Under the pieces are notes generated by a model. It was not told where the DNA came from. It worked only from the letters and a program-made list of their open reading frames with translations, and did no database searches. Of a stretch of 64,000 nt of DNA, positions 3,911 to 51,997 are shown piece by piece. The position numbers were made by a program, and so were the translations under genes. The first letter of the stretch is position 1. Every line of letters starts with the position of its first letter. The stretch is taken from the NCBI RefSeq assembly GCF_001194135.2, contig NC_068998.1:54682528-54746527 (forward strand), read 5' to 3'. Source of the stretch: Octopus bimaculoides (Eukaryota).

Positions 3911-4379
3911 ATGCGATTTCATCATGTGCATGGATCAGCTGTCACTTTGTCCAACAATCGGCTACATGCCAACCGAGATGAAAAGCACTTCTGTGATGGT
4001 ATTGTATTTGGTGACCAACCTCTGAAAATTGGTGTTCGGATTTCTCTCCAGATGACTTGCATTACGACTTGGAAAGGGGCTTTACGAATAGGAGTTACAT
4101 CTAATGACCCACAGTGTTTTCTTGAACAACACACATTACCACGTTACCTTTATCCTGATCTTGTTAAACAGGAAGGATATTGGGCACGTTTAGTGAACGA
4201 AAAGTTTGCTGTTTCTTATCACATCATAACATTTTATGTGAATTCCATGGGAGAGCTTCAACTGTTTGTCAACAATCACTACATCGGTGTTCTGCTGAAT
4301 GGAATTCCAACACACCTCCAATTGTGGTTCCTGCTTGACCTTTATGGAAATACATCAGCTGTCAAATTGGTTATTACAG
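3911..4379 (+). CDS. Exon 1: Neuralized homology repeat (NHR) domain
   Basis: MRFHHVHGSAVTLS...FCDGIVFGDQPL...GALRIGVTSNDP...GYWAR...LWFLLDLYGNTSAVKLV matches NHR hallmarks (FHxxHG, GxLRxGxT, W-x-x-x-D-x-YG). Donor ACAG|GTAATT, phase 1. A likely 5'UTR acceptor lies at 3806/3807. Confidence 0.92.
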
Positions 4380-7190: not shown

Positions 7191-10100
7191 GATATATATA
7201 TCACCATCATCATCATTTACTGTCCACTTGTCCATATTTGTTTACTCCCCAGACCTGCCTTGATTGAGCAGACTAGAGTCAAAAGCATTTCAGCCACAAC
7301 TGCCTCATACTTTTTGCTCAGATTTACTATCTCTAGGGCCATATTCAATTTGCTTGTTTTTATGAAGATTTTGCTGCTGTTTTCAGTACAAATTATCAGC
7401 ACATAGAAACTCCCCTGCCAGCTTGTGGCTCAGCCATTGGGTCACATGGCCCTGAGGCTTGGTCCAGTCACAGGCTTATAGATCCTCTTTGTTGTCTCAG
7501 CTATCTTGTTGTCCCCTTCCCCTCAAATGGTTCAGCCTCCTCCACTAAGTTTTTAAGAGCCATTTTTTTGAGTCTAGTTTTATAGGGTTAAGCAGATAAA
7601 AGACAAAATTCTTCCCCTGTAAAGAAAGCTGTTCTATATTTAAGGTAACTTTTCTGATCTGATGATCATTGCTCTTCAGATCATTTTGGTGTGTTAAATT
7701 TTACAGATAAAACCATCTTTTGTAGGAACACAATAAAAAATCTTGTAGTTGTTTTGTATTGGTTGTTGGATTCTGTAAGCAGACCTCTTTCCGTTGCAAG
7801 CATTTGGACCAGTTTGAGGATAACGTTGTCTCTTCTTCCCATCAGCCTGGGAGGCCTTGAAAAAATACAAGGTCATAGAATCGATGGCAAATAAAATTTA
7901 GTTTAGTATCATATCTTGTCAGTCCTATCTCAAGTAGTAAGAGTAATGTAGCGGATATGACTGAGGGATTTACATCAAAAAATTATTACACAAGTTCAGA
8001 ATAGAAGAGAAAGTAGTATTTAACTGGTGACTGTAAACCAATACTAAAATGTACAAATGAATATTTATTTGGAAGGATCTGATTTCAATGTCTGTCCTTT
8101 TAATATTGCATTGTGACATAGGACGACATACTTAACTGTCAATGATCATAAGTATAGCAGTGCAATGAATGATATGTTTCATTGCTGTTGGCAAAGAACT
8201 TTGAAATTGATGTGTATTTTGTTGTTTTGACATGTTACGTTTAATTCCTTCTGATAGGAAAAACTAGTTACAACAGACCATGTTGCTCTTCAGGGAGGTG
8301 TTCATCTCCCATCAACTAAATATTATTGGAGACCAGAATTAAGTACCAGACCCTTTTATTCTTTTATCTTTTACTTGTTTCAGTCATTAGACTGGCCATC
8401 CTGGAGCACTGCCTTTAAGGGTTTCATTGAACAAATCAATCTCAGTACTTATTTTTGGAATCTGGTACTTATTCTGTTGGGTTCCTGTTAAACTGCTGAG
8501 TCATGGGGATATAAACAAACTAACACCAGTTGTCATGTGGTAGTAAGACAAACACAAAGACTTCCCCTCCCCCCTACCAAATTCACTCACAAAGCATTGA
8601 TTGATCTGAGGCTATAGTAGAAGACATATGCCCAAGGTGCCAAACAGTGGAACTGAACTGGAAGCCACATGGTTGGAAAGCAACCTTCTGAATCACTGTG
8701 ATTTAGAAATGGTAGCAGTGGTGGTTTTTGTGTTGTTGGGTATGTTTTGTACAACTGTTTTACCTGAGATTTCTGTAATCTTCTAATTTTTGTTTCTATG
8801 ATTATATTTTAGATGATACTCCTAAGGAAATCTTTGTCCGAGGGGAGGCTGCTATCAAAGCCTACGAGAAGGCCTGCTGTTCAGGAAGTGAGGCTGTCTA
8901 TCGTACACGGCTTATGTTGGTCGGTAAAGACAGAGTCGGTAAAACTAGTCTCAAGCGTTCACTTCTGGGACAAAAGTAAGAGTTCAGATTTTTTCTTCTT
9001 ATAATATTTCACCTGTAAAGCTTCCCTTAGATTTGTTAGATTCTATGGTAGGAGTCATGTTCCTTCATGACCAAGGAAGGTATTTATCTGATGTTGGATG
9101 CCCTAATCGGAAGGGGTTGGGTGTAAAGTGGGCTGTTGCACACATATGTACCCAAAAGCCAATGGCAAGTTGAACTGAGGCAATTTATGGTGTGGGCATG
9201 AGAGAGAGAGTAAACTTACTCAGGGTTGTACAATTAGGAAGTTTGGCTTTGTAGTCTTGTGGTTATGGAAACAGCTGAGCAAAAGGAGAGCATTCTACAT
9301 GCTAAATACATATACGGTAGGCTCTCACAAACATAAGATTGTGACTTAGAGAACTTTGAAACAACATTGTTAGGAAGTAAGTTTTCTTACCTGCTCCAAT
9401 ACCTTCTTACCTGCTCCAATACTTTCTTACCTGCTCCAATACCTTCTTACCTGCTCTTTCAATCATAGCTATGAATAAGATAAGAAGGTAAATGGAGTAA
9501 ACCTAGATGAAATCTTGAAGGAATTAGGAGATTAAACTACACCCTGTCTTATCTATATATGTATAAACAATACATGTATTCTTCTAACCCATGCTAGCAT
9601 GGAGAACAGATGTAAAACAAATGAACTTTGTCCATTTGATTCACTATACTACACTCTAAATTGAGTGATCTGAAGTTAGTCTTAACAGTATACTAATAAG
9701 GTAGTAGACAATGTAGTATGGTAGACTAAAAGCATCATAATTAGTTTCCTCTTTCTGTAGATCTGAGTTGAAATCGCTTTCTCTTTTTCTCTCTGGGCTT
9801 TTCAGTCATTCTAATTAATAAAATAAGTAGCTGTAATATAGCAGGGTTGATTTGACTCTCATTAGCCATTTTTGAAAGCTGTCAACAGAAATCAACAATT
9901 AATCTTGTAATGTCTTGTGATTTGTTGTTTTTCACTTTGTTAAACTTGTGTCACTTGTTACATTGGGCTTAAGAAAGGAACACTTGTGCACACTTGTGTT
10001 TCTGCTATTTGCATATTCACACTTAGACAGACTCACCTCTGTGCACACTCCCAGACAGCAGAGCTCTAATTGTATTTACATAGTTTTCTGATTGTTTGAT

Positions 10101-21579: not shown

Positions 21580-22263
21580 NNNNNNNNNNNNNNNNNNNNN
21601 NNNNNNNNNNNNNNNNNNNNNNNNNNNNNNNNNNNNNNNNNNNNNNNNNNNNNNNNNNNNNNNNNNNNNNNNNNNNNNNNNNNNNNNNNNNNNNNNNNNN
21701 NNNNNNNNNNNNNNNNNNNNNNNNNNNNNNNNNNNNNNNNNNNNNNNNNNNNNNNNNNNNNNNNNNNNNNNNNNNNNNNNNNNNNNNNNNNNNNNNNNNN
21801 NNNNNNNNNNNNNNNNNNNNNNNNNNNNNNNNNNNNNNNNNNNNNNNNNNNNNNNNNNNNNNNNNNNNNNNNNNNNNNNNNNNNNNNNNNNNNNNNNNNN
21901 NNNNNNNNNNNNNNNNNNNNNNNNNNNNNNNNNNNNNNNNNNNNNNNNNNNNNNNNNNNNNNNNNNNNNNNNNNNNNNNNNNNNNNNNNNNNNNNNNNNN
22001 NNNNNNNNNNNNNNNNNNNNNNNNNNNNNNNNNNNNNNNNNNNNNNNNNNNNNNNNNNNNNNNNNNNNNNNNNNNNNNNNNNNNNNNNNNNNNNNNNNNN
22101 NNNNNNNNNNNNNNNNNNNNNNNNNNNNNNNNNNNNNNNNNNNNNNNNNNNNNNNNNNNNNNNNNNNNNNNNNNNNNNNNNNNNNNNNNNNNNNNNNNNN
22201 NNNNNNNNNNNNNNNNNNNNNNNNNNNNNNNNNNNNNNNNNNNNNNNNNNNNNNNNNNNNNNN

Positions 22264-27961: not shown

Positions 27962-28003
<42 letters not shown>

Positions 28004-32732: not shown

Positions 32733-32765
<33 letters not shown>

Positions 32766-33056
32766 GTACAAACAAACACGTATGCACATATAAATATATT
32801 TGTAGAAAATCTAAAATAATCGATCTTCAGATTTCCTGATAATTTGGTTATTTAGACTCGACTGGTATATCTTCTTGCAGTCATCTGCCAGAAATTGCTT
32901 CAGTATTTTAAGATGGCATTTACTCTGTCTATCCGTGATATTTTTAATTAAAATATTTCAAAAACATTCTCTTCTTCAGATCTTATCTCCCATAGCAACA
33001 AATTAAGCCTGTTAAAAGGTAATGCAAATAAATGTTGAATCGAGGATATCTGGTTT

Positions 33057-33089
<33 letters not shown>

Positions 33090-33468
33090 TTTTTCTTTAC
33101 CTTTTTTTTTTCTGTATTTCTTTCCTGCCAATTAGGTGGATAACAGCAAAGGAGCTAGTTATTATGTACCTTCGATGTTTCATCTACCACGAGATAACAA
33201 GAAGCTTCATCCAGGAAATTCAGATGTTGTCACCTTTTATTTAAATTTTCATGGATTCCTTCCAGGTAATTAACACAAATATCTTCATTTCCACCACCAT
33301 CGTCACCATCACCATTATCACTACTGTCATCAACATCATCACAGCCACCACCACCACCACTACCATCATCATCACCACCACCATTATCAGTAACACCTCC
33401 ACCACATTCCACTCTTGTCTAATTTTTCTGTGATGAAAACATTGTAATTGCCAGTATACAATTTTATT

Positions 33469-35666: not shown

Positions 35667-35720
<54 letters not shown>

Positions 35721-36005
35721 GTTTCAAATTTTGGCCCAAAGCCAGCAATTNNNNNNNNNNGGGGGGGGGGGGTAAATTGCTTACATCAACCCCAGTACTC
35801 AACTGATCCTTATTTTATAAACCTTGAAAGGATGAAAGGCAAAGTTGACCTTGGTGGAATTTCAACACAGGACATAAAGGTGGACAAAATGCCACTAAGC
35901 ATTTTTCCCAGCGTCCTATGGTTCTGCCAGCTCATCACCTTAATAATAATACTAATAGTAGTAGTAGTAGTAGTAGCAGCGCAACGTAACCAACCAAATA
36001 TCTAC

Positions 36006-36041
<36 letters not shown>

Positions 36042-42000: not shown

Positions 42001-45000
42001 TGCCTCTGATATCAATAATTTAGGGAAGGCTTACATTTCATTTTGATAGATATCCTCTAATAGCTGAAATCTCTCTTTGTTTCTCTTCACCTCAACAATT
42101 TTACCTTTTTATTTCCATTTTACAGAATTCTTTCCTTTTTTTTTTATTGCAGTCTTTTACATTTCTCTGACTCTTCTTGTCTATTTGGCTCTTTTTTTTT
42201 AATTTCTTTTTCTTTTTTTTTTGGCTTAAGCAAATTCTATAGGGCTGGTCATTTTGTGTTGCTGCCCCCTCTGTATTCCCCACAAATGCTGTTGGTCAAG
42301 TGCTTCCTATTTCCCATGAGTAGGAAGCTGTTTTATGCACCACCTGCATCGGTTTCATTGCAGATGCAGTCATGGAAGCCATGTGCACGGAAAGCAATTA
42401 AATGTTTCAGTGAACCAACATCAATCTAGAAGGAATATGTCAATGATCCTTTTGTAAGAATGTAGGAATTCCACAGAGTTTGTTTGTTGTGGTTACAAAA
42501 ATGTTCAACAGCGTGGAATCTAATTTTGCATCAGAGACAATTACCAAAGACTGACCCACTCTCCTAGACACATCAATTAATATAACTAGTGACAACGTGA
42601 TTACTATAATTGCTGTACTAATAATCATGTAGTTATCTAAAAACCATTGTAATATTAGCCGTGGTGGAGCTCGGCTGAAAATATTTATATACACAGAACA
42701 CCTACATAGAGATAATAGTATTTACCTCAACTGTGGGACGTACAAAAAACCCACACAATATTTATTTCACCATCATCATCATTTTACTTCAGTTTTCTTT
42801 GCTGGTATGGGTTGGATAGGTTACTGCAGTGTCTGAGTCGGTTCTTATTTAGAATTACTGCTTTCCCAGATGGGTCAGAGGGGAAACACCTTTATCTTTC
42901 ATCTTTCTCTTGGTTTTTATGCCTCAATGCCCTTCTGGTCACCATCCACTTTATAAAACGTACTGGGTGCATTTTATTGTGGCTATTGACAGTAGAGAGG
43001 ATGCTATATTCTTATTGAAATATATAGAGAAAAACATCGACACACAGGGAAATAGTAATTTATCTCAGCACTTAAATATATTGAAAAACCTACAAAAAGA
43101 GAAGAGTATTTATCTCACTGCTAAAATATAGAGAAAAAAACCCTTTAAGATAATAGTATTTATCTTACCAGTAAAATATACAGAAAACCTGCATATAAAT
43201 ATCTTTACACTGAAATTTTCTTTAGAGGTTGAAAACTTGGAATAATTTCAACATTTATGTATAGAATAAGAGAAAGTATTTATCTAAAAGAAAAAAAAAG
43301 AAAAAAGGAAGTAAAATAAATAATAGAAAATGAATGAGAGATGTGAATATCAAAAGTCTACGTTTGTTAAAGAGTCTTTTTATAGAGAAATAAAATAAAA
43401 TATCAACAAAAAGTCACATGAAGTTTCTGGAGGGAGTTAATTGTTAACTTGGATGATTTTTTTCATGGTGTGAAACAGATGGTGAGAGATAATTCCCCTG
43501 TTGGTAACATTCTCAACTGATGATGGCCATAACAGCTGAACTGGGATAATGTTGAGTAAAATGTCCCACTCACAAATAAAATGAACTTCTTGAGACAGAT
43601 TTGAACTTGTCACCTTTACACATACACTTTGTTAAATTGTCTCTTATTTTTTTTTATTACTTTTTCCTTAAACAGGTTATTTGTTGTGGCCATCGCCGGA
43701 TGAAAACAACATTCGTTCAAAAATGGTTCCCTCCCCACCACACAGTTGGTGAGTGCTTTTTTTTTCTCATGTTTCTGAGTAAAAAATGCCTTAATTGTTT
43801 ATATTATTTGCTTGTTAGAGTGAAACACAATTAACTATATTGGTAGACTTAAATGTTTTATACTTTAACTAAGATGGGAAGGTATGGGCCCTTAAATAAG
43901 GACCAAATGGGGAGAGGTGCAGCATCTACCTTATACATCAAAATCAGCAACTCAGTTTTTGAATCCATAAGGAACAGACACACTACACACACACATACAT
44001 GCACAAACTCTGTTATATATTTANNNNNNNNNNTATATATATAAAGAGAGAGAGAGAGAGAGAGAGCAGCTATATCTTGAAATAAACCATTTTCATTACA
44101 CAAAGCTGTTAGATTCAGTTTCAATTTGAAGTGAATTTAAGAACTTTGGCTGTTGTTGCACATCTCTTGTACAATGTTGTTGCTTCAGTTTCACCACACA
44201 GTCTCACACCAAACCATTTTCTAGACTTGTACAACTCCAAGGTGTGTGAATGCATTTCAAATGGGGTCCTTCTTGACCCTCTGATTGGCCTCTCAGAAGC
44301 TGCGATACATAAACAGGTACCTACCATGAGAATTAGGGTACAGTTTTTATAACAGTTTGAGAGGTACCTTCCATGGATGAAGATAGTGTCAGTATAAATG
44401 TAAGGTGGTATCTTTTTGTGTGTGTGTGTCCATGTCAGTTAACCAGTGTCATGATTATAGAGTGCTCTCTTATGTCTCATCACATAGCAATTAGACAAAT
44501 AGAGATTGATGAGATGATTGCCAAACTGAAATATGTACTGTGATCCATACAATCCACTAAAACTTTCCTAAATGGTGCTCCTGTATGGCCACAGTCACTG
44601 ACCAAAACCAGTGAAGCACTAAAGTAATTACACCCAATAATTAGCTTCATATTGGTAATTGCTGTAAGCTTTATTAATTGTAATTATTATTTTGTTTGTT
44701 TGTTTTTTTTATTGTAAAAGCCTTGAAGAAGACAATCCTTTCCAACAGTTTATTAGAATCGACAAAAGGTAACTTTGAGAAAGAAATAACAGATTTGCCT
44801 TATTGGATCAAAAGTGCTGCCAAGTTATTAAATAATGGAGTGGAAAACCTAGACTGGGTCTGTTTAGCCAATTATTTGGGTAAGAACACAAGAGAAAATT
44901 ATTATTGTTGTTGGATGTGTCTGATACTTGGAGAAAAATTTGATTTCTTCTGCTCTGTAATCGATTGCCTAACTTCAGTTTGCTACATGTTCACTACCAC

Positions 45001-46718
45001 ATGGTTACTTGTGAGTAGATTTGGTAATCAGAAATTGACTGAAGCCTGCCATGTATATATATCGGTGTGTGTGTCCTTGTTTTGGTTTTACATGTTTGTT
45101 GTAAATGAATGTCATTCATTTCCAATCTTCTGCAAAAGCATGTCTGACCATGAATCTAGCATCCCCACCCAGCTCAAAACAATATCTGTTTATCGTGATT
45201 TCTGGGTTATTTCCCATCATCAGCACAGAATAATTGTTCGGCTAGAGGTGGTGCTGCCAAATTCCCATTCGAAATATATAGTTTTCAAAGTGACAACAAG
45301 TCACTGATCTATAAATTAGAAAATTACTATTTTTAAATCTCACAACGAGAGATATTAGCAACAGTACTTTGGAGTAAAGATTGTTTGCCTTGTTTGAAAA
45401 TATAAGGACACAGATCGTGTCGTATAACCAGCTGGAGACGATGTCTCCTGGGGCTAAATTACAGCAACATTCGTCCTAAACCAGGACTGCCATGTTATGT
45501 TGGCAAACAATCTTTACTACAAAGTATTGTTGCTGAATATCTCTTGTTGTGAGATGTACAAATAGTAATTTTCTAACAGTGAATGTCGTTTTTATGGGTT
45601 TAAATATTCCTCAAGCATCTTTGAATTGGTAACGAATTTGTATTTGTACCTGTTACTGATTAGTGCAGTCACCCTGTATTATATAATTAGTATTGTAATT
45701 GAACATTTTATATTAAGTGTAAAAAAAAAAATGCTCTTAAATTCACAGTCTCCTAAATTTGTTGTCAATTCAGGTTATAAGAAACCGAAAATCGATAAAT
45801 TTAATAATGATTTAAATCCATCACTTGCTCTGCTCACTGACTGGATTCTTGGCAGCGGCAACACACAGGTGTCTGTGGATGTATTGCACACTTTCTTGGA
45901 GAAAATGTCCAGGTATGACATCATAGATCTTCTGAAACAAAGCAGAGGTAAGTACAAAAAAAAAAAAGATAAAGAAGATAAAATTTTTAAAATAAGTAAA
46001 TAAAATGTAAATAAATAAAGGTATTGTTTTGATAATGTGATAATATATTTAATTAAATCTTTCAAAGTAGCAGATTAGCAAAATCATGTCAGGACCTTTA
46101 GATTAAATGCATTTATTTGATTAGGCTCTGTGTATACTTTGGAAGCAGCAGTAGTAGTAGTAGTAGTAGTAGTGGTAGTTTACTGTTCTTCTCTTACCCC
46201 TCCCCCCTTCTGATGAGGTCAATTGTCTAAAAAAATTATAATTATATTAACGATTGCTAATTTCTGTCATTTAGATAATTTACAATAGCAAATGTGTTTT
46301 GCTTTTCCAGAACAATCCCACTGCCCACAAGTGTTTATCAGTTACCAGTGGGACAGTCAAGATGCAGTGAAGGCCCTGTGGGACAGGCTGGAAAGAGCCG
46401 GAATCTCTTGTTGGATGGACATTGGCCAGATGGGTGGTGGTGACCAGCTCTATAACAAGATTGAACAAGGAATTCGGAATTGCAAGGTGAGACACATCTA
46501 CTTGGCATTTTGAATTGTGTGTATGTTGCGGGGAGGCCAATATCCATAACGTACCTCTCCTCCAAATTTCAAGACTTCAGCTTTTGTTAGAAACAATTAT
46601 TTGGGGCAGACGACTGGATAATGCTTTGGCAGGATTCCTGGAGCAGCAGATGAAATGCCTTCTGCTATATAAACAGCATTTGTTCATCCTTTCGGGGTCG
46701 ATAAATTATAGTGGAAGG

Positions 46719-46774
<56 letters not shown>

Positions 46775-48251
46775 CATCATTATTACTAACAAATTCCATC
46801 TGACCCATGCAAGTATGGAAAAGTGAACGTTAAAAGCAGACATTAAATGATGATGATGATGATAATGATGTTCCTGGTGGAGTGGAATTGGTAAGTTTTG
46901 AAAGAGATTTACTTAGAAGTGGAGAGTCAAGTGCAAAGCAATCTTTGCATGGAGATGCTTCCAGAACGATCATGTTTGAGAAGTGGGAAAATGGACGATT
47001 CTGTTTTGTTGCTAACGAAGAATCTAACTTTGATTGCTTTGAAATTGAATTCAGTTTAATTCTTTTAAGTTGTAATTAATAATCTTTCGTTATTAATTGA
47101 TAATTTCATAATTGTGCTTAATCTGAAATGTTCTTTGATATCTTCTTTATATTCCGTTTGCTTCCATGGCTCTTTTAATGATGTTCTACTCATATGTGTT
47201 ATGGATGCAAGCACTTAGCTTATGCCACAACCATTTGTGTAATTTATCTTCGTTAATAAATGTGTTCAACTTGACGACTCATTTAATTGTCAAACTCCAT
47301 ATTCCTTGACTTTTTGAGTCTTGTCTTCTTTTTACCTTTTATCTTTTACTTGTTTCAGTCATTGGGCTGTGGCTATGCTGGAGCACCACCTTGAAGGGTT
47401 TCTTTTAAAGCCTGGTACTTATTCTGTTGCTCTCTTTTGTCAAAACTCTAAGTTACAGAACGTAAACAAACCAACACCAGTAGTGGGGGAACAACAACAA
47501 CAAAGAGACATACACAAAACACACATATATATATGAAAGGCTTCTTTCAGTTTCCATGAACCAAATTCACTCTTGAGGCATTGGGTAATCCTGGGCTATA
47601 ATAGAAGACATTTGCCCCAAGTACTACACAGTGGGACTGAACCTAAAACCGCATGGTTACTAAGTAAGCTTTTTAACCACATAATAGATTTCGTTAATAA
47701 TAATTTTACATCCAGTTTTCCTTGCAAGCCATCAGATGCAACTTGTGCATTATGTGAAAATAGTGCACTATGTTGCACTAATGATTATCTCACTTCTTAA
47801 ATAAACTAATATTGACCAATAACTTACATTGTTTCAATGTCCTCTCCGTCGTTGCATAATTATCTAAGAGTGACAATATTCTCTCCTCTGCCTTTCATTC
47901 TTTTAGAATTAATTCCTGGAATCAATTTAATAATCCTATAAAGCATTTCTTACATCTCAACATAATTTTAATTAGAAGACTAACTATTGTTTTTTCAAGC
48001 AGATGGCTTCCCTGAGTAACTTGACAGTACAGTCTGCTATTTTGCTCCCAAGACACTATCTTCGAATTCTGCTCTCAGTGAACTCTTTACAAGATATACC
48101 AATATTTACTGTTTATTTTATTCCATTGGGTTTTTTTTTTTCATAAAGTAAATATATTTGCTTCTTGCAAGTCTCTTTGTTTTTTGTTTTTGTTTTTCTT
48201 TCATTGTTAACCAGTGACCTTTGGTGTCTTGGTGTTGTATAAGTAGCAGAA

Positions 48252-48289
<38 letters not shown>

Positions 48290-51200
48290 CCATGCCAGCA
48301 TGGTAAATGTGTGTGAAATGCTGGTGGTGCACGTGTGTGTGTGTGTACACACATGACCCATACCAGCATGGAAAGCTGACATTAAATGCTGGTTTTATAT
48401 ATATATATATGTATATATATATATTGTAAATAGGTGCATCTCAGAACTGATTTTATATCTATAAAGATAAACTTTGACATTCAGCAGAAAATATCTTTTC
48501 GAGTTTAACTCTCACTTGCTATAAAAAAAACAACAATTCCAGAAAATACACACAAATACAAGAACTTCACCAATTTCTCTGCTAAGCAGTCACAAGAGGT
48601 TACCTTCCTCCAAAACATTTCCAAAAGCACATGCAGATATTTGAAATGAAGACACCCACAATCCAACTGAAGACGAAAGAAAAGTGAAGGTCATGGTTAG
48701 AATAGCTTTAGCCCTAGGTCTGCTCAATCTGGGTAGAGTTGGTGAAAAATGACAATCACAATCCAGTTACTCTTTCAAGAAATTCTGATCTTCCATATTA
48801 TTTACACCTGAAAAATTTTGTGTTTTTCTATTTGCATACTCTAAGGCATTATTAAAATAATAGTCTTAAATATTTGTGTGTGTGTGTGTGTGTGTGACTG
48901 GAATAAAACCAAAAAAGAAAAACCTAAATAGTAAGTTTTCCATGTTCAGAATCTGATTAGTTTAATGCAGCTACTTCTATTGAACAGATTTTAATGGATG
49001 CTCTTCCTCCTCCTCCTCCTCCGTTATCTCATTCATACACTTCTTCGTTCTCTTTCCTTCTCCTGATTACTTTAATCCGTGCTGTTCAACGAAGATTGTA
49101 TAACAATAGCATATTAACCTTCCCCCCCCCCCATTTGTTATTATCACATTGTCTTCTCGTCACAACCTTCTCTCATGGAAAAAGAAATAAAAATTAAAAA
49201 ATTGATTCGTTTCTATTGGAATCGTTTACTGGGTTCTAGCTGAACACAAATCATCGTTCTATTATATTCCCATCCAGCTCATTATATCGACAGCATTGCT
49301 TTCTTGTCTTTGTGTGTGTTGCTTCCTTTTGTAGACCATGTTACGTTACTGAAAAATATCAAACGTCTGAAGCATGCCTCACACAACCTGCCGCCATTTA
49401 CTTCTGATATCATTAGAGACAAGCATCATACGCAAACGCCTTGCCACTTTCCTAGCAAATCTCAGACCCTGTGCCAATGTAACAAATTGATATTTGTGGA
49501 ATTCAATGAGTTTCCTTCATCAAAAGAACTTTCACTATAGTTTCTTCCCTTCTGCTAAAATTCAATAGAAATCTCCAATGTCCGTTGTGTCAGTCTTTAT
49601 ATCACTGTGTCACTTCTTTCATTTCTCATACGGCTCTTCACAATAGTTATTTACTTTGGTACGACACACATTTAAAGACAACCAATACAAACTGTTCAAT
49701 TGTTCTCAAGACATTTCAGTAATTTCTTTATCAAAATCCCTCAACAGTTGAAATACAAAGTCAACAAAAGTGGGATTTCAACCACAAATTGAAGCTAAAT
49801 TTACTCCACTATTCTGTAATGATGATGATGATGATGATGGTTACAGTTTTTACTTCTTCGTTGCTCTCATAATAGAGATATTTCTCTTTTATATATATAA
49901 AAAAATTGTGTTCCCCTCCCCCCTCCTGCAATTGACCCCAAATAGTTTTCCCTTTTGTTTTTTCTGTCTCTGCCAACAATTATTAATTTTACTGTTTATT
50001 TCAGTTTTTCATCATTTTTTTTCTTAAATACCACATTCCTCTTACCTTCTCTGCCACTTCCTCCTCCTTCCCTCTATGCTTTCCTCTCACCCCCCCCCCA
50101 CTATCCCCATGTCACTACACTCCCATCCTTGCTCACCTCTACACACTTCCCATCTTACATTGATACCCTGCACACACCACTTCACCCCTTCCTATCCCCC
50201 TTCATAGAACCATATACCCATCTGGCCCCAAATCCCTTCTTTCTCCAACTCCCTTTTCTCATTTTATTTTATTTTTTCAACCACTTTTCCTCTTTTTATT
50301 TTTATTTTCACTTTTTCTTCTGATGAGGGACTTGTGTCCAAAATATCAAGACTCTTTCCCTTTTTTTTTAAGCATTAAACTAATACATTTGTTAAAACTT
50401 GTCCATCCTGTGTTGTCTTCGATTTTTTGTGCTCACTGCTGCCTTCTGCATTCATACAACCCACCTGCAATTACTGAGACCAAGTTATTTGTTCGTTAAG
50501 AGAGGACATTACTTTTTTAAGGCCAATACTCTCTCTTCCCAGTGATTTGCAGAAGATTTATACAGGACTCACCTCAAATGTCTTTAAAAGACATTATAAA
50601 CAGGTTTGTTTTATGAGTCTATGAACCTCTCTAAGTCGCATGGAGCCAGGTCAAACTGCTATCAAATATATTATGTGTGTGTGTGTTTTAAGTGGCTGTC
50701 ATGACTTTCTTCTCTCATTTCATTTTAGATTATATTGGCCTGCGTTACACCCAAGTATGTCATATCTCATCTCTGCAACCGCGAACTGAGCTTAGCTGAT
50801 GGTCTGCGGAAACCTATCCTCCCTGTGATGTTTGAAAGTATCGTCTGGCCTCCACCGGGTGGCATGGCACTCATCTTTTCCAACCTTGTATATATTGACA
50901 TGAATGGTTAGTTTAATTATCAATTAGTATGGTTTATAATTTGGTGGCGGTGGTGGGGGAGTGAAAAACGAAATGCTGGGCTCAGTCAAAGTCAAGTGAC
51001 CCACTTTAGATGCATCTAAAGTAGAAGCCAATGAAAGAGGATGATGTTTAGCTCTCTCCCTCTATGTCTTAATGCAAATACATTGTGGAAAGGCAAATTA
51101 ATTGCAGCATTTGTTAGGATGTCATATCTTTTACGGACACGCTCTTTATAAAAACAAATCTATATCAGTAGTAGACAAAACATGTCCGGCAGTGGCAGTG

Positions 51201-51997
51201 AGAATGGTAAATGTGCATTCCTGCCTGTTTTGGATTTGGTTAGTCGGATGTACCAACTGTTGACCACAAGCTAAGACAAAATCTGACATCACTGATATAA
51301 AAAAAAAACAGGGATTAAAAAATCACTGATGTTGCATTTAACCACTCAGCCAAACAAAAGTGGCAAACATCGATGTACAGAATTTTAGTGACATTTTTGT
51401 GATATTGTCTCTACATCTGGAACAACCTGTTGTTGATGGAACTCCATATCTATCTTGTGCAGCATAAACTGATCAGTTGAGAAGAACAGGCCTACTGTTC
51501 AATCACTGATTGATTCTGAAATTCATTGATTGTCATTGATGAAAGTATAGGGCTCAGAGCATTTGTTAAACTTGTTTCTTGGTTAATCTGACCCAAACTA
51601 TCTTATCTTTTAACTTACCAATAATCTTCATCATTTTGCAGGTATTGGGGGACACGGAAGCTCAGGAATGACTGCTGACTTGGCGGATAAATATAAGGAG
51701 ATTATCCACCGAATTTCACATTATTTTATTAACGATGAGAATAGTAAAAGTACAACAGAATCCAAATCATTTGTTCCCAGTTCTGTAAAATCCAATCAAA
51801 CTAGTAATGAAGTTAACGAAGTCACTCCATCTATAGAAACAACACATGAGGAACATCATGTAGGTTCATTGAATCCTCACCAAGAAATGAATGAACAATT
51901 GACCATACATAACAGCAACCATCCAAGAACTCTATCCAGAACTAATGTGGCTAGGACGACATCTCGTTGGAGATGTGGTCTATGTAATGTATTATAA
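3911..51997 (+). CDS. Multi-exon gene model: NHR-Roc-COR-Death-TIR(-CaaX) ROCO protein, about 1234 aa visible, 20 exons
   Basis: All 20 exons have canonical AG/GT ends and matching phases; summed length 3705 nt = 1235 codons including stop. In-frame TGA at 3899-3901 upstream of ATG 3911. The only weak junction is exon 5 to exon 6, where an exon is probably missing. Confidence 0.9.
6721..7188. repeat. (CT)n microsatellite flanking N-gap 6766-7158
   Basis: Direct reading of the sequence. Confidence 0.95.
8354..8700 (-). mobile_element. tRNA-derived SINE family C, near full length
   Basis: Reverse complement of the family C head (A/B boxes, ggttcagtyccactg, ccttgggcaagt-like core) and its tail ending atgactgaaacaagtaaaaga. 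Confidence 0.8.
8813..8975 (+). CDS. Exon 2: Roc G1/P-loop
   Basis: TTTTAG|ATG...CAAAA|GTAAGA. With phase 1 it reads DDTPKEIFVRGEAAIKAYEKACCSGSEAVYRTRLMLVGKDRVGKTSLKRSLLGQ (GxxxxGKT). The ORF track shows another frame. Confidence 0.93.
9384..9456. repeat. 20-bp minisatellite, about 3.7 copies
   Basis: Unit ttcttacctgctccaatacc starts at 9384, 9404, 9424 and 9444. Confidence 0.95.
11408..11745 (+). mobile_element. tRNA-derived SINE family C
   Basis: gggttcagttccactgcatggcattttgggtaagcgtcttccactatagcc...atgactgaaacaaatgaaag. Other partial copies: 19303-19368(+), 19505-19765(-), 24130-24310(-), 28530-28670(-), 37480-37640(-), 41147-41275(+), 41325-41435(-), 47325-47680(-), 56815-57040(+), 58548-58760(+). 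Confidence 0.8.
11757..11845. repeat. 32-bp minisatellite, about 2.8 copies
   Basis: Unit tttacttaccttrtttyattaatctaccttaa starts at 11757, 11789 and 11821. Confidence 0.92.
12511..12680 (-). mobile_element. RTE-tail element (family A), 3' end
   Basis: (CAT)n-cgtttaatgtccattttccatgctggcatgggttgg is the reverse complement of the family A tail. Confidence 0.8.
15331..15716 (+). mobile_element. RTE-tail element (family A) with internal subrepeats
   Basis: Repeated ggtggcacataaaaagcacc / gactggc blocks, then ttggcgttaggaaggg...aacccatgccagcatggaaagcggatattaaacg(ATG)n. Other copies: 14853-14952(+), 18083-18352(+), 31651-31830(-), 52906-53178(+), 55006-55175(-). Confidence 0.85.
16282..16436 (+). 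CDS. Exon 3: Roc switch I (G2) and start of insertion
   Basis: TTACAG|A...ATTG|GTAAAT, phase 2 to 1. Reads KDDQPLESTDGVDLSESCSFNTSDSKAWRL...; STDGVD is the Roc switch-I type motif. Confidence 0.9.
16553..16679. mobile_element. 127-bp Tc1/mariner-type MITE
   Basis: 29-bp TIRs CAGGGTGGCCACAAGGTCTGGGTGCATGG / CCATGTACCCAGACTTTGTGGACACCCTG (3 mismatches), flanked by TA at 16551-52 and 16680-81. Confidence 0.85.
19124..19251 (+). CDS. Exon 4: Roc insertion
   Basis: CTCTCAG|GT...AAA|GTAAGT, phase 1 to 0. Reads GGVAALEEEFTDSTALNVYLEMVLHQKEKELKNKNNFQKNDKK. Confidence 0.85.
20185..20755 (-). mobile_element. RTE LINE 3' end (ORF C-terminus, 3'UTR, (GAT)n tail)
   Basis: Minus strand: HMDKDICVKKCRSLTVERTCGRGRPRKTWNEVVKHDLRTLGL, a typical RTE C-terminus, followed by the family A tail. 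Confidence 0.88.
21164..21448 (+). CDS. Exon 5: insertion end and Roc G3
   Basis: CCCACAG|ACA...CAG|GTAGGA, phase 0 to 0. Ends VTLDIWDFAGQAVYYTTHQ, the classic Roc WDFAGQxxYYxTH motif. Confidence 0.95.
21471..22332. repeat. (TAC)n and (GT)n microsatellites flanking N-gap 21580-22263
   Basis: Direct reading of the sequence. Confidence 0.95.
23303..23448. repeat. 35-bp minisatellite, about 4.2 copies
   Basis: Unit tgtgttggcaacatttggtyaatgagttgatggtt. Confidence 0.95.
23500..23760. mobile_element. Palindromic MITE-like element
   Basis: Outer inverted ends aatatgcttgaggcac / gtgtctcaagcatatt; inner 49-bp inverted repeat 23575-23623 vs 23676-23724 (46/49). Confidence 0.75.
25380..25700 (+). mobile_element. 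tRNA-derived SINE family D
   Basis: Head gaaggcacatggctcagtgg...gagttcaattccc...gtgtccttgagcaagac. Related heads at about 32300-32530(+) and 37860-37960(-). Confidence 0.65.
25810..25995 (+). CDS. Exon 6 (visible): Roc G4 region
   Basis: EDQTVENMSNLGYIDYWMKSIHAHS...SPPMFIVGTHRNSL...KQM|GTAAGT. The acceptor is uncertain: AAG at 25807-25809 (phase 0) or TAG at 25785-25787 (phase 2). Confidence 0.82.
26544..26758 (+). mobile_element. tRNA-derived SINE family B, full length
   Basis: A-box tggcagagtgg, B-box gagttcaaattc, core gttgactttgcctttcatcctttc..ggtcgataaattaagtaccag. Other copies: 13465-13645(-), 16712-16900(-), 25225-25322(-), 35200-35380(-), 35719-35937(-), 36044-36255(+), 40050-40212(+). 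Confidence 0.85.
27143..27262 (+). CDS. Exon 7: Roc G5 region
   Basis: TTGCAG|GTG...CAG|GTTTGA, phase 0. Reads VKEKFNALEEFLIGKPYYKHIIKPFFAVENYGSEDEEDVQ. Confidence 0.9.
27725..27868 (+). CDS. Exon 8: Roc end / COR start
   Basis: TTTTAG|ATT...CAG|GTAGGT. Reads ICLLREHIQKVALQEPYMGEKIPTRWLQFEDII... (COR IPxxWL motif). Absent from the ORF track. Confidence 0.92.
29852..30061 (+). CDS. Exon 9: COR-A
   Basis: CTCAG|GTG...CAA|GTAAGT. Reads ...MLDFYHDLGVIIYYGG...LVILNLQWLVEMFRRVIT (COR FxHDLGxIxY and VIxxxxWL motifs). Confidence 0.93.
31471..31629 (+). CDS. Exon 10: COR-A
   Basis: TTACAG|GAT...AAG|GTAGGA. Reads ...LEKYGLLDEQLINYLW...LLGLLQKFDLICKRIPSK. Confidence 0.92.
32575..32790. repeat. Compound (TA)/(TG) microsatellite
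   Basis: Direct reading; it produces the spurious YI/HT-rich ORFs. Confidence 0.95.
33136..33265 (+). CDS. Exon 11: COR-A/B junction
   Basis: ATTAG|GTG...CCAG|GTAATT, phase 0 to 1. Reads VDNSKGASYYVPSMF...FYLNFHGFLP. Confidence 0.9.
34909..35066 (+). CDS. Exon 12: COR-B
   Basis: TTTTCAG|AA...AAG|GTAACA, phase 1 to 0. Reads EALFHRILAHTLHWSQECGGSEPYLYYRVARLFLDSEHDFILEMLPSSYAKVK and continues the FLP-E-xLFHR motif. Confidence 0.9.
36984..37085 (+). CDS. Exon 13: COR-B
   Basis: TTGCAG|GTT...AAG|GTATTC, phase 0 to 0. Reads VVVMRVAEAREEDVYISDNGQKAPLVTSPQAVAK. Confidence 0.83.
38148..38327 (+). CDS. Exon 14: COR-B end and Cys/His cluster
   Basis: CAACAG|GTA...AAG|GTTAGT. Reads VRNFLDTTLLRLREVWMKRISYSTSVSCPCGQLCDFHHISGCTAETCLHFLDLDECLSKK. 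Confidence 0.9.
39050..40970 (+). mobile_element. Decayed Ty3/Gypsy gag-pol remnant (intron 14)
   Basis: Motifs in order, broken by stops and frameshifts: Zn-knuckle CGSKHTSSECPAFGQTCIKC (about 39060), RT YFAKMDLKEAHQQIE (about 39860), INTPK, YGIKTGSATF*RV, YQDS (40216), RNase H TTSKTRYSNIEK (about 40690), DLLSQL (about 40955). Confidence 0.8.
43676..43748 (+). CDS. Exon 15: end of Cys/His cluster
   Basis: AAACAG|GTT...GTTG|GTGAGT, phase 0 to 1. Reads VICCGHRRMKTTFVQKWFPPHHTV. Confidence 0.88.
44721..44879 (+). CDS. Exon 16: linker and Death domain N-half
   Basis: T-rich tract, GTAAAAG|CC...TTGG|GTAAGA, phase 1 to 1. Reads ...LPYWIKSAAKLLNNGVENLDWVCLANYL (DWxxLAxxLG death-fold motif). Confidence 0.88.
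45774..45947 (+). CDS. Exon 17: Death domain C-half
   Basis: ATTCAG|GT...AGAG|GTAAGT, phase 1 to 1. Reads GYKKPKIDKF...PSLALLTDW...SVDVLHTFLEKMSRYDIIDLL (LLxxW and LxxxxRxD death-fold pattern). Confidence 0.9.
46311..46486 (+). CDS. Exon 18: TIR domain N-half
   Basis: TTCCAG|AA...AAG|GTGAGA, phase 1 to 0. Reads QVFISYQWDSQDAVKALWDRLERAGISCWMDIGQMGGGDQLYNKIEQGIRNCK (TIR_2 VFISY and WxD..GG motifs). Confidence 0.95.
50020..50440 (+). mobile_element. Penelope-like element remnant with decayed hammerhead motif
   Basis: Long pyrimidine-rich tract followed by tcttCTGATGAgggacttgtgtccAAAATATCaaga, matching the minimal type I hammerhead layout described for PLE pseudo-LTRs. Confidence 0.5.
50729..50906 (+). 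CDS. Exon 19: TIR domain C-half with conserved Glu
   Basis: TTTTAG|ATT...AATG|GTTAGT, phase 0 to 1. Reads IILACVTPKYVISHLCNRELSLADGLRKPILPVMFESIVWPPPGGMALIFSNLVYIDMN. Absent from the ORF track. Confidence 0.95.
51642..51997 (+). CDS. Exon 20: TIR end, low-complexity linker, CaaX terminus
   Basis: TTGCAG|GT, phase 1. Reads GIGGHGSSGMTADLADKYKEIIHRI...RTTSRWRCGLCNVL* with TAA at 51995-51997. Confidence 0.9.

What the first reader, a model, noticed from the sequence alone, without database searches (positions are those of the whole stretch)
3911..51997. One polypeptide joining NHR, Roc-COR GTPase, Death domain, TIR and a prenylation motif: candidate GTPase-gated immune/cell-death signalling system
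Seen: 20 phase-consistent exons with recognisable NHR, Roc (G1 GKDRVGKT, G2 STDG, G3 WDFAGQ), COR, Death and TIR motifs; no kinase or LRR region was seen. Known: Roc-COR is the nucleotide-dependent dimerisation switch of LRRK2, DAPK1 and MFHAS1. DAPK1 has Roc-COR-Death. Death and TIR domains oligomerise in MyD88-type signalling. NHRs bind target proteins. Inference: NHR acts as sensor, Roc-COR as switch, Death as polymerisation scaffold and TIR as effector, functionally like NLR/STAND-TIR receptors but with a GTPase switch. Roc-COR-TIR fusions may already appear in invertebrate TIR surveys, so novelty is unverified; I know of no functional characterisation.
Basis: partly seen in the sequence, partly recalled or inferred. 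Interest (0 to 1): 0.9.

Follow-up and report, generated by a model that had tools for sequence, protein, structure and literature searches.

The report
Octopus lipid-anchored GTPase–Death–TIR signalling gene
The window holds one real octopus gene for a large, probably membrane-anchored switch protein that joins a Neuralized-type binding domain, an LRRK2-type GTPase, a death domain and a SARM1-like TIR domain; the gene is old, single-copy and conserved across many invertebrate phyla, nobody has tested its function, and one of its exons is hidden in an assembly gap.

Summary
The + strand of 3911-51997 encodes Octopus bimaculoides LOC106875913. Twenty GT-AG exons reproduce the RefSeq protein exactly, with Pfam hits for Neuralized/NHR, Roc, COR-A, Death and TIR_2, and a C-terminal CNVL. 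There is no kinase, LRR, RING or NACHT.

Gap test: four gaps sit harmlessly in introns. The gap at 21580-22263 hides a 99-nt, phase-0 exon encoding Roc switch II/beta4. RefSeq patched that hole with 90 nt of intron (25720-25809), so the true gene has 21 exons.

The architecture is not a fusion artefact. A cephalopod ortholog is one uninterrupted ORF on transcript-like contigs from nine sequencing runs. About 57 near-single-copy orthologs occur in molluscs, annelids, nemerteans, flatworms, echinoderms, hemichordates and amphioxus.

CaaL is invariant (35/35), usually as CxxCaaL. The TIR is the best-conserved domain and is closest to SARM1 and bacterial NADase TIRs, not MyD88. The death domain is closest to NRADD/p75NTR. 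A sister family carries the same Death-TIR-CaaX cassette behind a different N-terminus.

The sensor/switch/scaffold/effector reading is plausible but untested. An NLR-like pathogen receptor is unlikely. The architecture was already listed in an Aplysia immune-gene survey, without any function.

The parts
3911..4379 (+). Exon 1: start codon and the whole NHR (Neuralized homology repeat) domain, aa 1-156
   Evidence: Pfam Neuralized 1.2e-36, aa 3-154. Profile vs PDB: Drosophila Neuralized NHR1 2yue/4kg0, E 1e-49. AF2 model of the Argonauta ortholog superposes on 4kg0 with TM 0.95, rmsd 1.1 A.
8813..8975 (+). Exon 2: linker helix and start of Roc; G1/P-loop GKDRVGKT at 8923-8946
   Evidence: GxxxxGK(T/S) is conserved in 35/35 orthologs.
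16282..16436 (+). Exon 3: Roc switch I (STDG at 16301-16312) and beta2
   Evidence: The switch-I Thr is present in 34/35 orthologs.
19124..19251 (+). Exon 4: family-specific insertion inside Roc, holding the one conserved island (GGVAALEEEFTDSTALNVYLEMVL)
   Evidence: Present in P0001. E/A/N of the island are invariant in alignment A2. Predicted as a long helix of low confidence in the Argonauta model.
21164..21448 (+). Exon 5: rest of the Roc insertion, beta3 and G3/switch II start (WDFAGQ at 21407-21424); ends ...YYTTHQ
   Evidence: D, G and THQ are invariant.
21580..22263 (.). Assembly gap that hides the true exon 6 (99 nt, 33 codons, Roc switch II/beta4: VFLSSRAVYVIVFN...)
   Evidence: The O. 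sinensis gene has 21 exons and its exon 6 lies at L005 31882-31980. Collinear blastn breaks exactly at the gap. Pfam Roc and Ras scores rise from 42.5/22.1 bits in P0001 to 54.8/35.7 bits in the O. sinensis protein, which has the exon.
25720..25809 (+). Intronic filler that RefSeq counts as the 5' part of its exon 6; not real coding sequence
   Evidence: Its 30 aa replace the segment conserved in all orthologs. An older RefSeq model (P0097) used a different filler, INEFTADLEMVIGGTGTK, at about 25037-25090.
25810..25995 (+). True exon 7 (186 nt, as in O. sinensis): Roc alpha3-beta5 and G4 motif GTHRN at 25945-25959
   Evidence: The G4 fourth position is Asn in 22/35 orthologs and Asp in 8/35.
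27143..27262 (+). Exon with the end of Roc (the stretch FFAVEN at 27215-27232 occupies the place where G5 is expected, judged by eye)
   Evidence: G5 assignment is by position only.
27725..33265 (+). Four exons (27725-27868, 29852-30061, 31471-31629, 33136-33265) encoding COR-A and the start of COR-B
   Evidence: Pfam COR-A 5.9e-18, aa 555-715. Exon map.
34909..43748 (+). Four exons (34909-35066, 36984-37085, 38148-38327, 43676-43748) encoding COR-B and its Cys/His-rich tail
   Evidence: Pfam COR-B is only sub-threshold, and only in orthologs (19.9 bits). Placement is by position. C30, C32, H51, C58 and C66 are invariant in A1. The region is modelled at pLDDT 68-85.
44721..45947 (+). Two exons (44721-44879, 45774-45947) encoding the Death domain
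   Evidence: Pfam Death 1.8e-7, aa 958-1026. Profile vs PDB: NRADD 2e-11, p75NTR 1e-9, MyD88 DD 1e-5.
46311..50906 (+). Two exons (46311-46486, 50729-50906) encoding the TIR core: box 1 FISYQWD at 46334-46354; CNRELS at 50774-50791, holding the Glu at the NADase catalytic position
   Evidence: Pfam TIR_2 1.8e-23. Profile vs PDB: AbTIR 1.6e-7, SARM1 8e-6. hhalign vs SARM1 TIR: 94.5% probability. Foldseek top hits are SARM1. The Glu is present in 35/35 orthologs.
51642..51997 (+). Last exon: invariant GGHG loop (51647-51667), last TIR helix, unconserved disordered tail, CGLCNVL (51974-51994) and stop
   Evidence: The tail has pLDDT <50. CaaL is present in 35/35 orthologs, with a second Cys 3 residues (32/35) or 2 residues (3/35) upstream.

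Best explanation
This is the octopus ortholog of an ancient, essentially single-copy bilaterian ROCO gene. It encodes a protein of about 1267 aa that lacks the kinase and leucine-rich repeats of LRRK-type ROCO proteins.

Shown here:
- Domain order: Neuralized-type NHR, then a Roc G domain with a 130-170 aa insertion, COR-A/COR-B, a p75NTR/NRADD-like death domain, a SARM1/bacterial-type TIR, a disordered linker and CxxCaaL.
- One mRNA in a related cephalopod.
- Strong conservation of the G1-G3 motifs, of the TIR (its Glu at the catalytic position and its GGHGG loop), and of the CaaL end.
- The same Death-TIR-CaaX cassette in a sister family with another N-terminus.

Inferred mechanism:
- The CaaL cysteine is geranylgeranylated and the neighbouring cysteine palmitoylated, so the C-terminal TIR hangs on a membrane by a flexible tether.
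- Roc-COR acts as the nucleotide-dependent dimer switch, as in other ROCO proteins.
- The NHR binds a partner or holds the protein closed.
- On activation, Death and TIR domains of neighbouring molecules self-associate at the membrane.
- The clustered TIR then most likely works as a SARM1-like NAD+-consuming enzyme, driving a cell-death or stress/immune signal.

Whether the biological setting is immunity, neuronal degeneration or development is open.
For: Gene and architecture.

Single transcript: (uninterrupted 3870-nt ORF with UTRs on contigs from 9 runs).

Orthologs with the same order across eight phyla, about one per species.

Switch competence: G1, the switch-I Thr, DFxGQ and THQ are nearly invariant. 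Roc is closest to M. barkeri Roco (2e-20) and LRRK2 Roc (2e-16).

TIR type:
- It is the best-conserved domain (53-66% identity between octopus and other phyla).
- Profile hits rank AbTIR, PdTIR, Cat1 and SARM1 far above TLRs. The MyD88 TIR is absent from the list.
- hhalign puts the invariant Glu on SARM1 E642 and matches the KxIxPI...WPxP stretch.
- phmmer puts the same Glu on the Glu of AbTIR's WTNYEL stretch, which I recall as the catalytic Glu.
- Foldseek top hits are SARM1.
- MyD88-type TIRs rarely keep this Glu (PMC7075850).

Membrane anchor: CaaL in 35/35 orthologs after an otherwise unconserved tail.

Modularity: the sister family solenoid-Death-TIR-TIR-CaaX.

Established knowledge behind the inferences: a CaaX box ending in Leu directs geranylgeranylation; Roc-COR dimerises in a nucleotide-dependent way; the SARM1 TIR needs self-association for NADase activity.
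Against: No experiment on any member of this family turned up in the searches made of the held library.

The Glu at the catalytic position also occurs in non-enzymatic TLR1/2/6/10 TIRs (PMC7075850).

The aromatic residues of the NAD pocket are not conserved. The SARM1 W638 / AbTIR Trp position is H/L/N here, and the SARM1 F603 position is variable.

Foldseek TM-scores for MyD88 and TLR1 TIRs (0.56-0.75) overlap those for SARM1 (about 0.65-0.77).

The G4 Asp that reads guanine is Asn in octopus and in 22/35 orthologs, so GTP specificity itself is uncertain.

COR-B is only weakly recognised by Pfam.

Both AF2 models are of moderate quality (mean pLDDT 66-70), and no inter-domain contacts could be read from them.
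Confidence: 0.45

Rival explanations
1. Non-enzymatic adaptor. The protein is a membrane-resident MyD88/TRAM-like bridging adaptor. Its TIR docks on receptor TIRs (TLR/IL-1R-like) at the membrane, and its death domain nucleates a Myddosome-like death-domain assembly. Roc-COR and NHR only tune availability.
For: Death precedes TIR, as in MyD88. The Aplysia survey filed its ROCO+Death+TIR protein under MyD88-like. The lipid anchor parallels myristoylated TRAM and PIP2-binding TIRAP (established knowledge). MyD88 and TLR1 TIR structures match the model with TM 0.56-0.75. The MyD88 death domain is detectable at 1e-5. The NAD-pocket aromatics are not conserved. The phyla that keep the gene are mostly TLR-rich (my own knowledge).
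Against: The MyD88 TIR is not found by the family profile even at E<=1, whereas SARM1 and bacterial NADase TIRs are. There is no BB-loop proline; the loop is an invariant DxGQxGGGD. The Glu is invariant, unlike in MyD88 and TIRAP. The death domain is closer to NRADD/p75NTR than to MyD88. The gene is also present in the flatworm Macrostomum.
Confidence: 0.3
2. The protein is an NLR-like innate immune receptor in which the NHR senses a pathogen or danger ligand directly, and the GTPase replaces the STAND NTPase.
For: There is an architectural analogy of sensor, NTPase switch and TIR to plant TNLs and bacterial STAND-TIR systems. SPRY/NHR-fold domains serve as recognition modules in TRIM-type immunity (PMC8195603). 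One clam RNA-seq table lists a 'neuralized pats1' transcript as strongly down in parasite lesions. ROCOs are proposed as immune receptors in brown algae (PMC11378527, abstract).
Against: There is roughly one copy per species, with no expansions. The NHR is 36-51% identical between octopus and non-cephalopod phyla, with flatworm and sea-urchin orthologs lower at 30-33%, and about 45% identical to Drosophila Neuralized NHR1. That is the pattern of a conserved endogenous partner, not of an arms race. No NACHT or NB-ARC domain is present. The clam observation concerns one isoform in one data set.
Confidence: 0.12
3. The five-domain protein is an annotation artefact that fuses neighbouring genes (an NHR gene, a ROCO gene and a Death-TIR gene), helped by the gaps.
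For: The window has five gaps inside the gene. RefSeq demonstrably invented coding sequence at 25720-25809, and differently in an older release. No octopus cDNA was found in the collections.
Against: All junctions are GT-AG and in phase. The only affected junction lies inside the Roc domain, not between domains. A cephalopod ortholog is one ORF on intron-less contigs from 9 runs. A compact-genome ortholog has Neuralized, Roc, COR, Death and TIR within 4.7 kb on one strand. The same order is predicted independently in about 57 orthologs.
Confidence: 0.02

Closest known systems
DAPK1 (ROCO family)
   Same: Roc-COR is followed by a C-terminal death domain, and the death domain comes right after COR-B.
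   Different: No kinase, calmodulin-binding or ankyrin region. There is an NHR at the N-terminus, and a TIR and a CaaX box after the death domain. Not an ortholog.
LRRK2 / LRRK1 and prokaryotic Roco proteins
   Same: It has a Roc G domain plus COR. Profile hits: M. barkeri Roco 2e-20, LRRK2 Roc 2e-16, C. tepidum Roco 1.7e-12. The G4 region has the same T-H-x-x pattern (SPPIFIVGTHRN vs LRRK2 SPVILVGTHLD, aligned by eye from memory). The NHR protein NEURL4 binds the LRRK2 Roc domain (PMC4565672, abstract), so the NHR-Roc fusion here may mirror that contact.
   Different: No LRR, kinase or WD40. Roc carries a 130-170 aa insertion between beta2 and beta3. The G4 Asp is replaced by Asn in most members. 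The effector is Death-TIR rather than a kinase.
SARM1 (and bacterial NADase TIRs such as AbTIR)
   Same: The TIR subtype matches: box 1 PxVFISY, the Asp of the BB-loop region, Glu at the E642 position, and the KxIxPI...WPxP stretch. Like SARM1, it is one conserved copy per genome with an N-terminal regulatory region.
   Different: There are no ARM repeats and no SAM domains. A death domain sits where SARM1 has its SAM oligomeriser. The equivalents of W638 and F603 are not conserved. An invariant GGHGG loop is present. The anchor is a C-terminal lipid anchor. Enzyme activity is untested.
MyD88
   Same: A death domain is followed by a TIR. The Aplysia survey files its ROCO+Death+TIR protein as 'MyD88-like'.
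   Different: The TIR is not of the MyD88 type. The death domain is nearer to NRADD/p75NTR. About 950 aa of NHR-Roc-COR lie in front, and a CaaX box sits at the end.
Drosophila Neuralized (NHR1)
   Same: The NHR is a close homolog: E 1e-49, and the model superposes with TM 0.95 and 38% identity.
   Different: There is a single NHR and no RING finger, so it is not an E3 ligase of that type.
Uncharacterised sister family: solenoid-Death-TIR-TIR-CaaX (e.g. Dreissena XP_052279458.1, Haliotis asinina XP_067667248.1, Ptychodera XP_070570166.1)
   Same: Its Death-TIR module scores 400+ bits against this family's profile, and it also ends in CaaX. It probably corresponds to the 'MyD88-like with Armadillo-type fold' proteins of Aplysia.
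   Different: The N-terminus is a helical-repeat region of about 900 aa instead of NHR-Roc-COR. It has two TIRs. A K/S-rich stretch replaces the second Cys before CaaX. It has no GGHGG loop.

Membership tests
ROCO proteins | A Roc (Ras-of-complex) G domain | tested here: met
   Pfam Roc scores 42.5 bits in P0001 and 54.8 bits in the O. sinensis ortholog (cut-off 27). PDB profile hits to LRRK2 and Roco Roc domains range from 2e-20 to 2e-16.
ROCO proteins | A COR domain directly C-terminal of Roc | tested here: met
   Pfam COR-A scores 65.6 bits (cut-off 35.3) at aa 555-715, immediately after Roc. COR-B is only sub-threshold, and only in orthologs (19.9, 19.3 and 14.4 bits against a cut-off of 27), so the COR-B half rests on position and on weak hits.
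ROCO proteins | Canonical nucleotide-binding motifs G1-G4 | tested here: inconclusive
   G1, the switch-I Thr and G3 are conserved in 34-35 of 35 orthologs. The G4 guanine-specificity Asp is Asn in octopus and in 22/35 orthologs. Binding and hydrolysis were not measured.
DAPK1 orthologs | N-terminal CaM-regulated kinase and ankyrin repeats | tested here: not met
   No Pkinase or Ank hit at E<=0.05.
LRRK orthologs | LRR before Roc, and kinase (plus WD40) after COR | tested here: not met
   No LRR, Pkinase or WD40 hit.
SARM1 orthologs | ARM repeats and tandem SAM domains before the TIR | tested here: not met
   No ARM or SAM hit.
NADase-type TIR domains (SARM1, AbTIR, plant TIRs) | Catalytic Glu in the alphaC region | tested here: met
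   Glu is present in 35/35 orthologs. It aligns to SARM1 E642 and to the Glu of AbTIR's WTNYEL stretch. It is necessary but not sufficient (PMC7075850).
NADase-type TIR domains (SARM1, AbTIR, plant TIRs) | Aromatic residue four positions before the Glu (SARM1 W638, the AbTIR Trp) | tested here: not met
   The position is H/L/N in the family. It is deleted in the hhalign alignment to SARM1.
NADase-type TIR domains (SARM1, AbTIR, plant TIRs) | NAD+ cleavage activity | not testable with these tools
   Needs a biochemical assay.
MyD88 orthologs | A death domain followed by a MyD88-type TIR (BB-loop Pro, no catalytic-position Glu) | tested here: not met
   The domain order is met. However, the MyD88 TIR is not recovered at E<=1 by the family profile, the BB loop is DxGQxGGGD and the Glu is invariant.
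Neuralized E3 ligases | NHR domain(s) plus a C-terminal RING | tested here: not met
   The NHR is met. There is no RING or zf-C3HC4 hit.
NLR/STAND receptors | A NACHT or NB-ARC STAND NTPase | tested here: not met
   No such hit. The NTPase is Ras-like.
CaaX-prenylated proteins | Cys at position -4 from the true C-terminus; Leu at the last position directs geranylgeranylation | tested here: met
   The end is CNVL followed by the stop codon at 51995-51997. CaaL is present in 35/35 orthologs. Actual lipidation cannot be tested here.

The most novel reading that the evidence does not exclude
The family is a second, SARM1-independent lineage of metazoan TIR NAD+-consuming enzymes. It would be tethered to membranes by geranylgeranyl and palmitoyl groups and gated by a ROCO G domain whose G4 Asn may even shift nucleotide preference away from GTP. 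It would control cell death or degeneration in most invertebrate phyla, and would have been lost in vertebrates, tunicates and ecdysozoans. The fused NHR would then be the built-in counterpart of the NEURL4-LRRK2 Roc contact.
Probability: 0.25. Interest if true: 0.85.

Novelty: new variant of a known kind. Interest (0 to 1): 0.58.

Why it matters
ROCO proteins matter because of LRRK2 and DAPK1, and TIR enzymes because of SARM1, plant immunity and bacterial defence. Here one conserved protein couples the two.

If the Roc-COR switch really gates a SARM1-like TIR at a membrane, that would be a new way of regulating TIR signalling. It would also be a natural system for asking what Roc-COR does when no kinase is attached.

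The NHR-Roc fusion offers a 'Rosetta stone' hint for the reported NEURL4-LRRK2 interaction.

The finding that the Death-TIR-CaaX cassette is shared by two widespread families gives invertebrate immunology and neurobiology a concrete, testable module. I found no paper in the held library that mentions the lipid anchor.

On the practical side, the RefSeq models of this octopus gene contain invented residues inside the G domain and should not be used for structure or motif work.

Tried and rejected
1. The missing Roc segment was searched for elsewhere in the window with tblastn of two orthologs at word size 2. It is absent.

2. The in-frame 'QVFLS-stop' at 25702-25719 mimics the exon 5/6 junction. 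It has no AG acceptor in front and was judged to be chance.

3. The idea that the RefSeq filler might be a divergent real sequence was rejected. O. sinensis and O. vulgaris, 97% identical elsewhere, have the canonical segment, and the syntenic interval falls in the gap.

4. A search for an octopus transcript spanning exons 5-7, using the last large protein search, returned only two distant fragments.

5. Short 'stand-alone' TIR-CaaX proteins from the TIR-only search looked like a new small family. One checked case (P0098) is the last exon of an ortholog on a compact eukaryotic contig, read by a prokaryotic-style gene caller. Another (P0115) lies just downstream of a Death-TIR ORF on its contig. 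The rest are assumed to be similar.

6. Gerdol et al. 2017 on ecTIR-DC families is probably the survey that classifies this architecture. It is not in the paper library, so I could not check which family number, if any, it received.

7. The amphioxus domain-shuffling paper PMC2575513 does not mention Roc or NHR.

8. Rfam and tRNA scans of the window were empty.

9. Retro-element-like ORFs in the intron at 38912-39937 got no significant Pfam hit.

10. Foldseek could not separate SARM1-type from MyD88-type TIR by TM-score alone.

Full report
**What the window is.** The window is AT-rich animal DNA, about 35% G+C, with seven runs of N. A rough splice of the long + strand open frames hit Pfam Neuralized, Roc, COR-A, Death and TIR_2. 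In the large protein collection it matched 'uncharacterized protein LOC106875913 [Octopus bimaculoides]' (P0001, XP_052830315.1, 1264 aa), followed by orthologs from many phyla. A splice-aware exact mapping shows that 20 GT-AG exons from 3911 to 51997 reproduce P0001 residue for residue. G1 lies at 8923-8946, G2 at 16301-16312, G3 at 21407-21424 and the CaaX end at 51974-51994.

**Gap test.**
- Orthologs read ...YYTTHQ|VFLSSRAVYVIVFN... after G3. P0001 instead reads ...YYTTHQ|VTLNELPLFLVLCMNLTFSHIYSKSLLFLK.
- The cluster mates from O. sinensis and O. vulgaris, about 97% identical elsewhere, carry the canonical segment. An older O. bimaculoides model carries yet another unrelated filler.
- On the gap-free O. 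sinensis locus (L005) the gene has 21 exons. Exon 6 is 99 nt, phase 0/0, and encodes VFLSSRAVYVIVFNICDDLSTSPITKFTNDSNL.
- Collinear DNA alignment runs up to window 21572 and resumes at 22331. The 4.1 kb of O. sinensis sequence in between, which holds exon 6, corresponds to the gap at 21580-22263.
- tblastn finds the segment nowhere else in the window.
- So one exon, encoding Roc switch II and strand beta4, is unread. Window 25720-25809 is intron that the annotation pipeline used as filler, and the true next exon starts at 25810.
- Pfam Roc and Ras scores are higher in the O. sinensis protein, which has the real exon, than in P0001.
- The other four gaps lie in introns whose flanking exons abut as in the orthologs.

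**One gene or several.**
- Every junction is in phase.
- The 60%-identical cephalopod ortholog P0003 is encoded as one uninterrupted 3870-nt ORF with UTRs on 4.9-6.3 kb contigs. These were assembled independently from nine sequencing runs. In a lineage whose octopus ortholog has 20 introns, such contigs must be transcripts.
- A compact-genome ortholog has the Neuralized, Roc, COR-A, COR-B, Death and TIR pieces in order within 4.7 kb.
- The same order is predicted in about 57 orthologs, roughly one per species. These come from cephalopods, gastropods, bivalves, a chiton, the annelid Owenia, the nemertean Lineus, the flatworm Macrostomum, echinoderms, hemichordates and amphioxus.
- No vertebrate, tunicate, arthropod or nematode protein with this architecture appeared. 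The best cnidarian hits lack NHR, Death and TIR, and one coral fragment has the same TIR type.

**NHR.** The family profile matches Drosophila Neuralized NHR1 at E 1e-49. The AF2 model superposes on 4kg0 with TM 0.95 and rmsd 1.1 A. There is no RING.

**Roc.**
- G1, the switch-I Thr, DFxGQ and THQ are nearly invariant.
- The closest solved relatives are M. barkeri Roco and LRRK2.
- The first peculiarity is a 130-170 aa insertion between beta2 and beta3. It is unconserved apart from one helical island in exon 4 and is modelled with low confidence.
- The second is that the G4 motif reads T-H-R-N. The Asp that normally reads the guanine base is Asn in 22 of 35 orthologs and Asp in only 8. In Ras-like proteins a D-to-N change at this site shifts preference to xanthine nucleotides (established knowledge), so nucleotide preference needs measuring.

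**COR.** COR-A is clear. COR-B is weak in Pfam but present by position, and it ends in a Cys/His-rich stretch with invariant residues.

**Death domain.** It is closest to NRADD (2e-11) and p75NTR (1e-9). The MyD88 death domain is more distant at 1e-5.

**TIR.**
- It is the most conserved part of the protein, 53-66% identical between octopus and other phyla.
- It matches Pfam TIR_2 far better than the classical TIR model.
- The family profile ranks AbTIR, PdTIR, CRISPR-associated Cat1 and SARM1 well above TLR TIRs. It does not retrieve the MyD88 TIR at all.
- hhalign against the human SARM1 TIR (sequence written from my memory) gives 94.5% probability. It aligns the invariant Glu with E642 and KPILPVMFESIVWPPPG with KNIVPIIDGFEWPEPQ.
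- Foldseek's best hits are SARM1 structures, but MyD88 and TLR1 TIRs have similar TM-scores.
- The Trp four residues before the Glu and the BB-loop Phe of SARM1 are not conserved here.
- An invariant GGHGG loop follows the core. By eye its His lies one position from SARM1 H685; this was not tested.
- A published survey notes that this Glu is common in TLR1/2/6/10 and rare in MyD88 and TIRAP, so it does not prove enzyme activity (PMC7075850).

**Tail.** The tail is unconserved and predicted disordered. Yet every one of 35 orthologs ends in CaaL, and a second Cys lies three (32/35) or two (3/35) residues upstream. Leu at the last position directs geranylgeranylation, and a nearby Cys is the usual palmitoylation site (established knowledge).

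**Wider family.**
- An exhaustive profile search with COR-B tail, Death, TIR and tail found 310 cluster representatives at E<=1e-30.
- Besides the orthologs there is a sister family of 1150-1570 aa in molluscs, echinoderms, hemichordates and a rotifer.
- Its layout is an N-terminal region of about 900 aa with only weak helical-repeat hits, then Death, then two TIR_2 domains.
- These proteins also end in CaaX, preceded by a Lys/Ser-rich stretch. Of the hits of 600 aa or more, 49 of 77 end in CaaX.
- The lipid-anchored Death-TIR cassette is therefore a conserved unit whose N-terminal regulator has been exchanged. That is the best comparative support for reading NHR-Roc-COR as the regulatory half.

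**How it most likely works.**
- Shown: the architecture, the conservation pattern, the single transcript and the TIR affinity.
- Inferred: a membrane-tethered molecule in which the nucleotide state of the Roc-COR dimer, together with the NHR (partner-binding or autoinhibitory), controls self-association of Death and TIR. The clustered TIR then acts either as a SARM1-like NAD+-consuming enzyme (my preferred reading, about 0.45) or as a non-enzymatic scaffold of the MyD88/TRAM kind (about 0.3).
The gene is single-copy and slowly evolving, and its NHR is still about 45% identical to fly Neuralized.
- The closest solved relatives of all four modules (Neuralized, LRRK2, p75NTR/NRADD, SARM1) are proteins best known from neurons. 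A role in neuronal death or degeneration, or in development, is as open as an immune one.

**What is known.**
- The Aplysia immunome study lists a ROCO-containing Death+TIR 'MyD88-like' gene and shows TIR+COR proteins with NHR in a figure legend. [quoted passage not shown]
- A review figure lists TIR among the domains of the multidomain Trichoplax ROCO proteins it depicts (PMC4104024).
- A clam RNA-seq table lists 'neuralized pats1' as strongly down in parasite lesions (PMC4769524).
- NEURL4, a six-NHR protein, binds the LRRK2 Roc domain (PMC4565672).
- The bivalve TIR survey that defined 'ecTIR-DC' families is not in the library, so I could not check its classification.
- I found no functional, structural or biochemical study of this family, and no mention of its CaaX end.

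**Verdict.** This is a real, correctly read gene with an unusual, deeply conserved and functionally untested architecture. It is a new variant within the ROCO family rather than a new kind of system, and it has already been noticed in catalogues. The new points from this check are the exon lost in the gap and the invented RefSeq residues, the SARM1/bacterial character of the TIR, the non-canonical G4, the Roc insertion, the universal CxxCaaL end and the sister family sharing the Death-TIR-CaaX cassette.

Noticed in passing
window 25702-25719: In the frame of the RefSeq filler the sequence reads Q-V-F-L-S-stop. These are the same five residues as the exon 5/exon 6 junction of orthologs (THQ|VFLSS). 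No AG acceptor precedes it, so I took it as chance, though a small mis-join cannot be excluded.
   Followed up: partly
window 3-371 (- strand): A reverse-transcriptase fragment (Pfam RVT_1, 2.9e-13), cut by the window start. It is a retroelement remnant upstream of the gene.
   Followed up: yes
window 11546-11741, 15530-15716, 16716-16893, 18157-18353, 20207-20363, 25234-25319, 26579-26753, 35203-35378, 35714-35909, 36069-36252, 40046-40196, 52983-53174, 55005-55177: About 13 copies of an interspersed repeat of roughly 180 bp (SINE-like), mostly in the introns of the gene. There is no tRNA and no Rfam match. The gap at 35751-35760 falls inside one of the copies (35714-35909), and the gap starting at 53179 begins a few bases after another (52983-53174).
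   Followed up: partly
window 6720-6765, 21480-21579, 22264-22330: Microsatellites flank the two gaps whose flanks were read: (CT)n before the gap at 6766, and (TAC)n before and (GT)n after the exon-hiding gap. This probably explains why assembly broke there.
   Followed up: partly
window 38912-39937 (+), intron between exons at 38327 and 43676: Short ORFs with a retroelement flavour: a Cys-rich gag-like stretch and a 'DLKEAHQQI' RT-like start. None reached significance in Pfam.
   Followed up: partly
window 25945-25959 (GTHRN): The Roc G4 motif has Asn where Ras-like and LRRK2 G domains have the guanine-reading Asp. It is Asn in 22/35 orthologs and Asp in 8/35. This may mean altered or relaxed nucleotide specificity.
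   Followed up: partly
window 16437-21406 (exons 3-5 region); P0002 residues about 250-392: A 130-170 aa insertion splits the Roc domain between beta2 and beta3. It is unconserved apart from one island (consensus GLEEEYxxAxAxNIVQELL, exon 4) that is predicted helical. Its function is unknown.
   Followed up: partly
P0211, P0214, P0233, P0220, P0206, P0264 (other species); locus L006 6970-8558: A sister family has a helical-repeat N-terminus of about 900 aa, then Death, TIR and TIR, and ends in a K/S-rich CaaX box. 49 of 77 long relatives end in CaaX. Multi-TIR proteins with 5-8 TIR stretches also turned up (P0249, P0265).
   Followed up: partly
window 38148-38327 and 43676-43748: The COR-B tail is Cys/His-rich (C-x-C ... 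HFLxLxxC ... CxHRR) with five invariant Cys/His positions. The middle Cys pair is missing in hemichordates and amphioxus. It may be a metal site; this was not tested.
   Followed up: no
RefSeq/UniProt records of this gene (P0001, P0097, P0096): Three different public protein models exist for the same O. bimaculoides gene: 1264 aa, 1252 aa, and an 827-aa N-terminally truncated one. Two of them contain different invented residues at the gap.
   Followed up: yes
window 52000-64000: No convincing coding sequence lies downstream of the gene on either strand. There are only repeats, two more gaps (53179-53914, 59557-60325) and low-complexity ORFs.
   Followed up: partly
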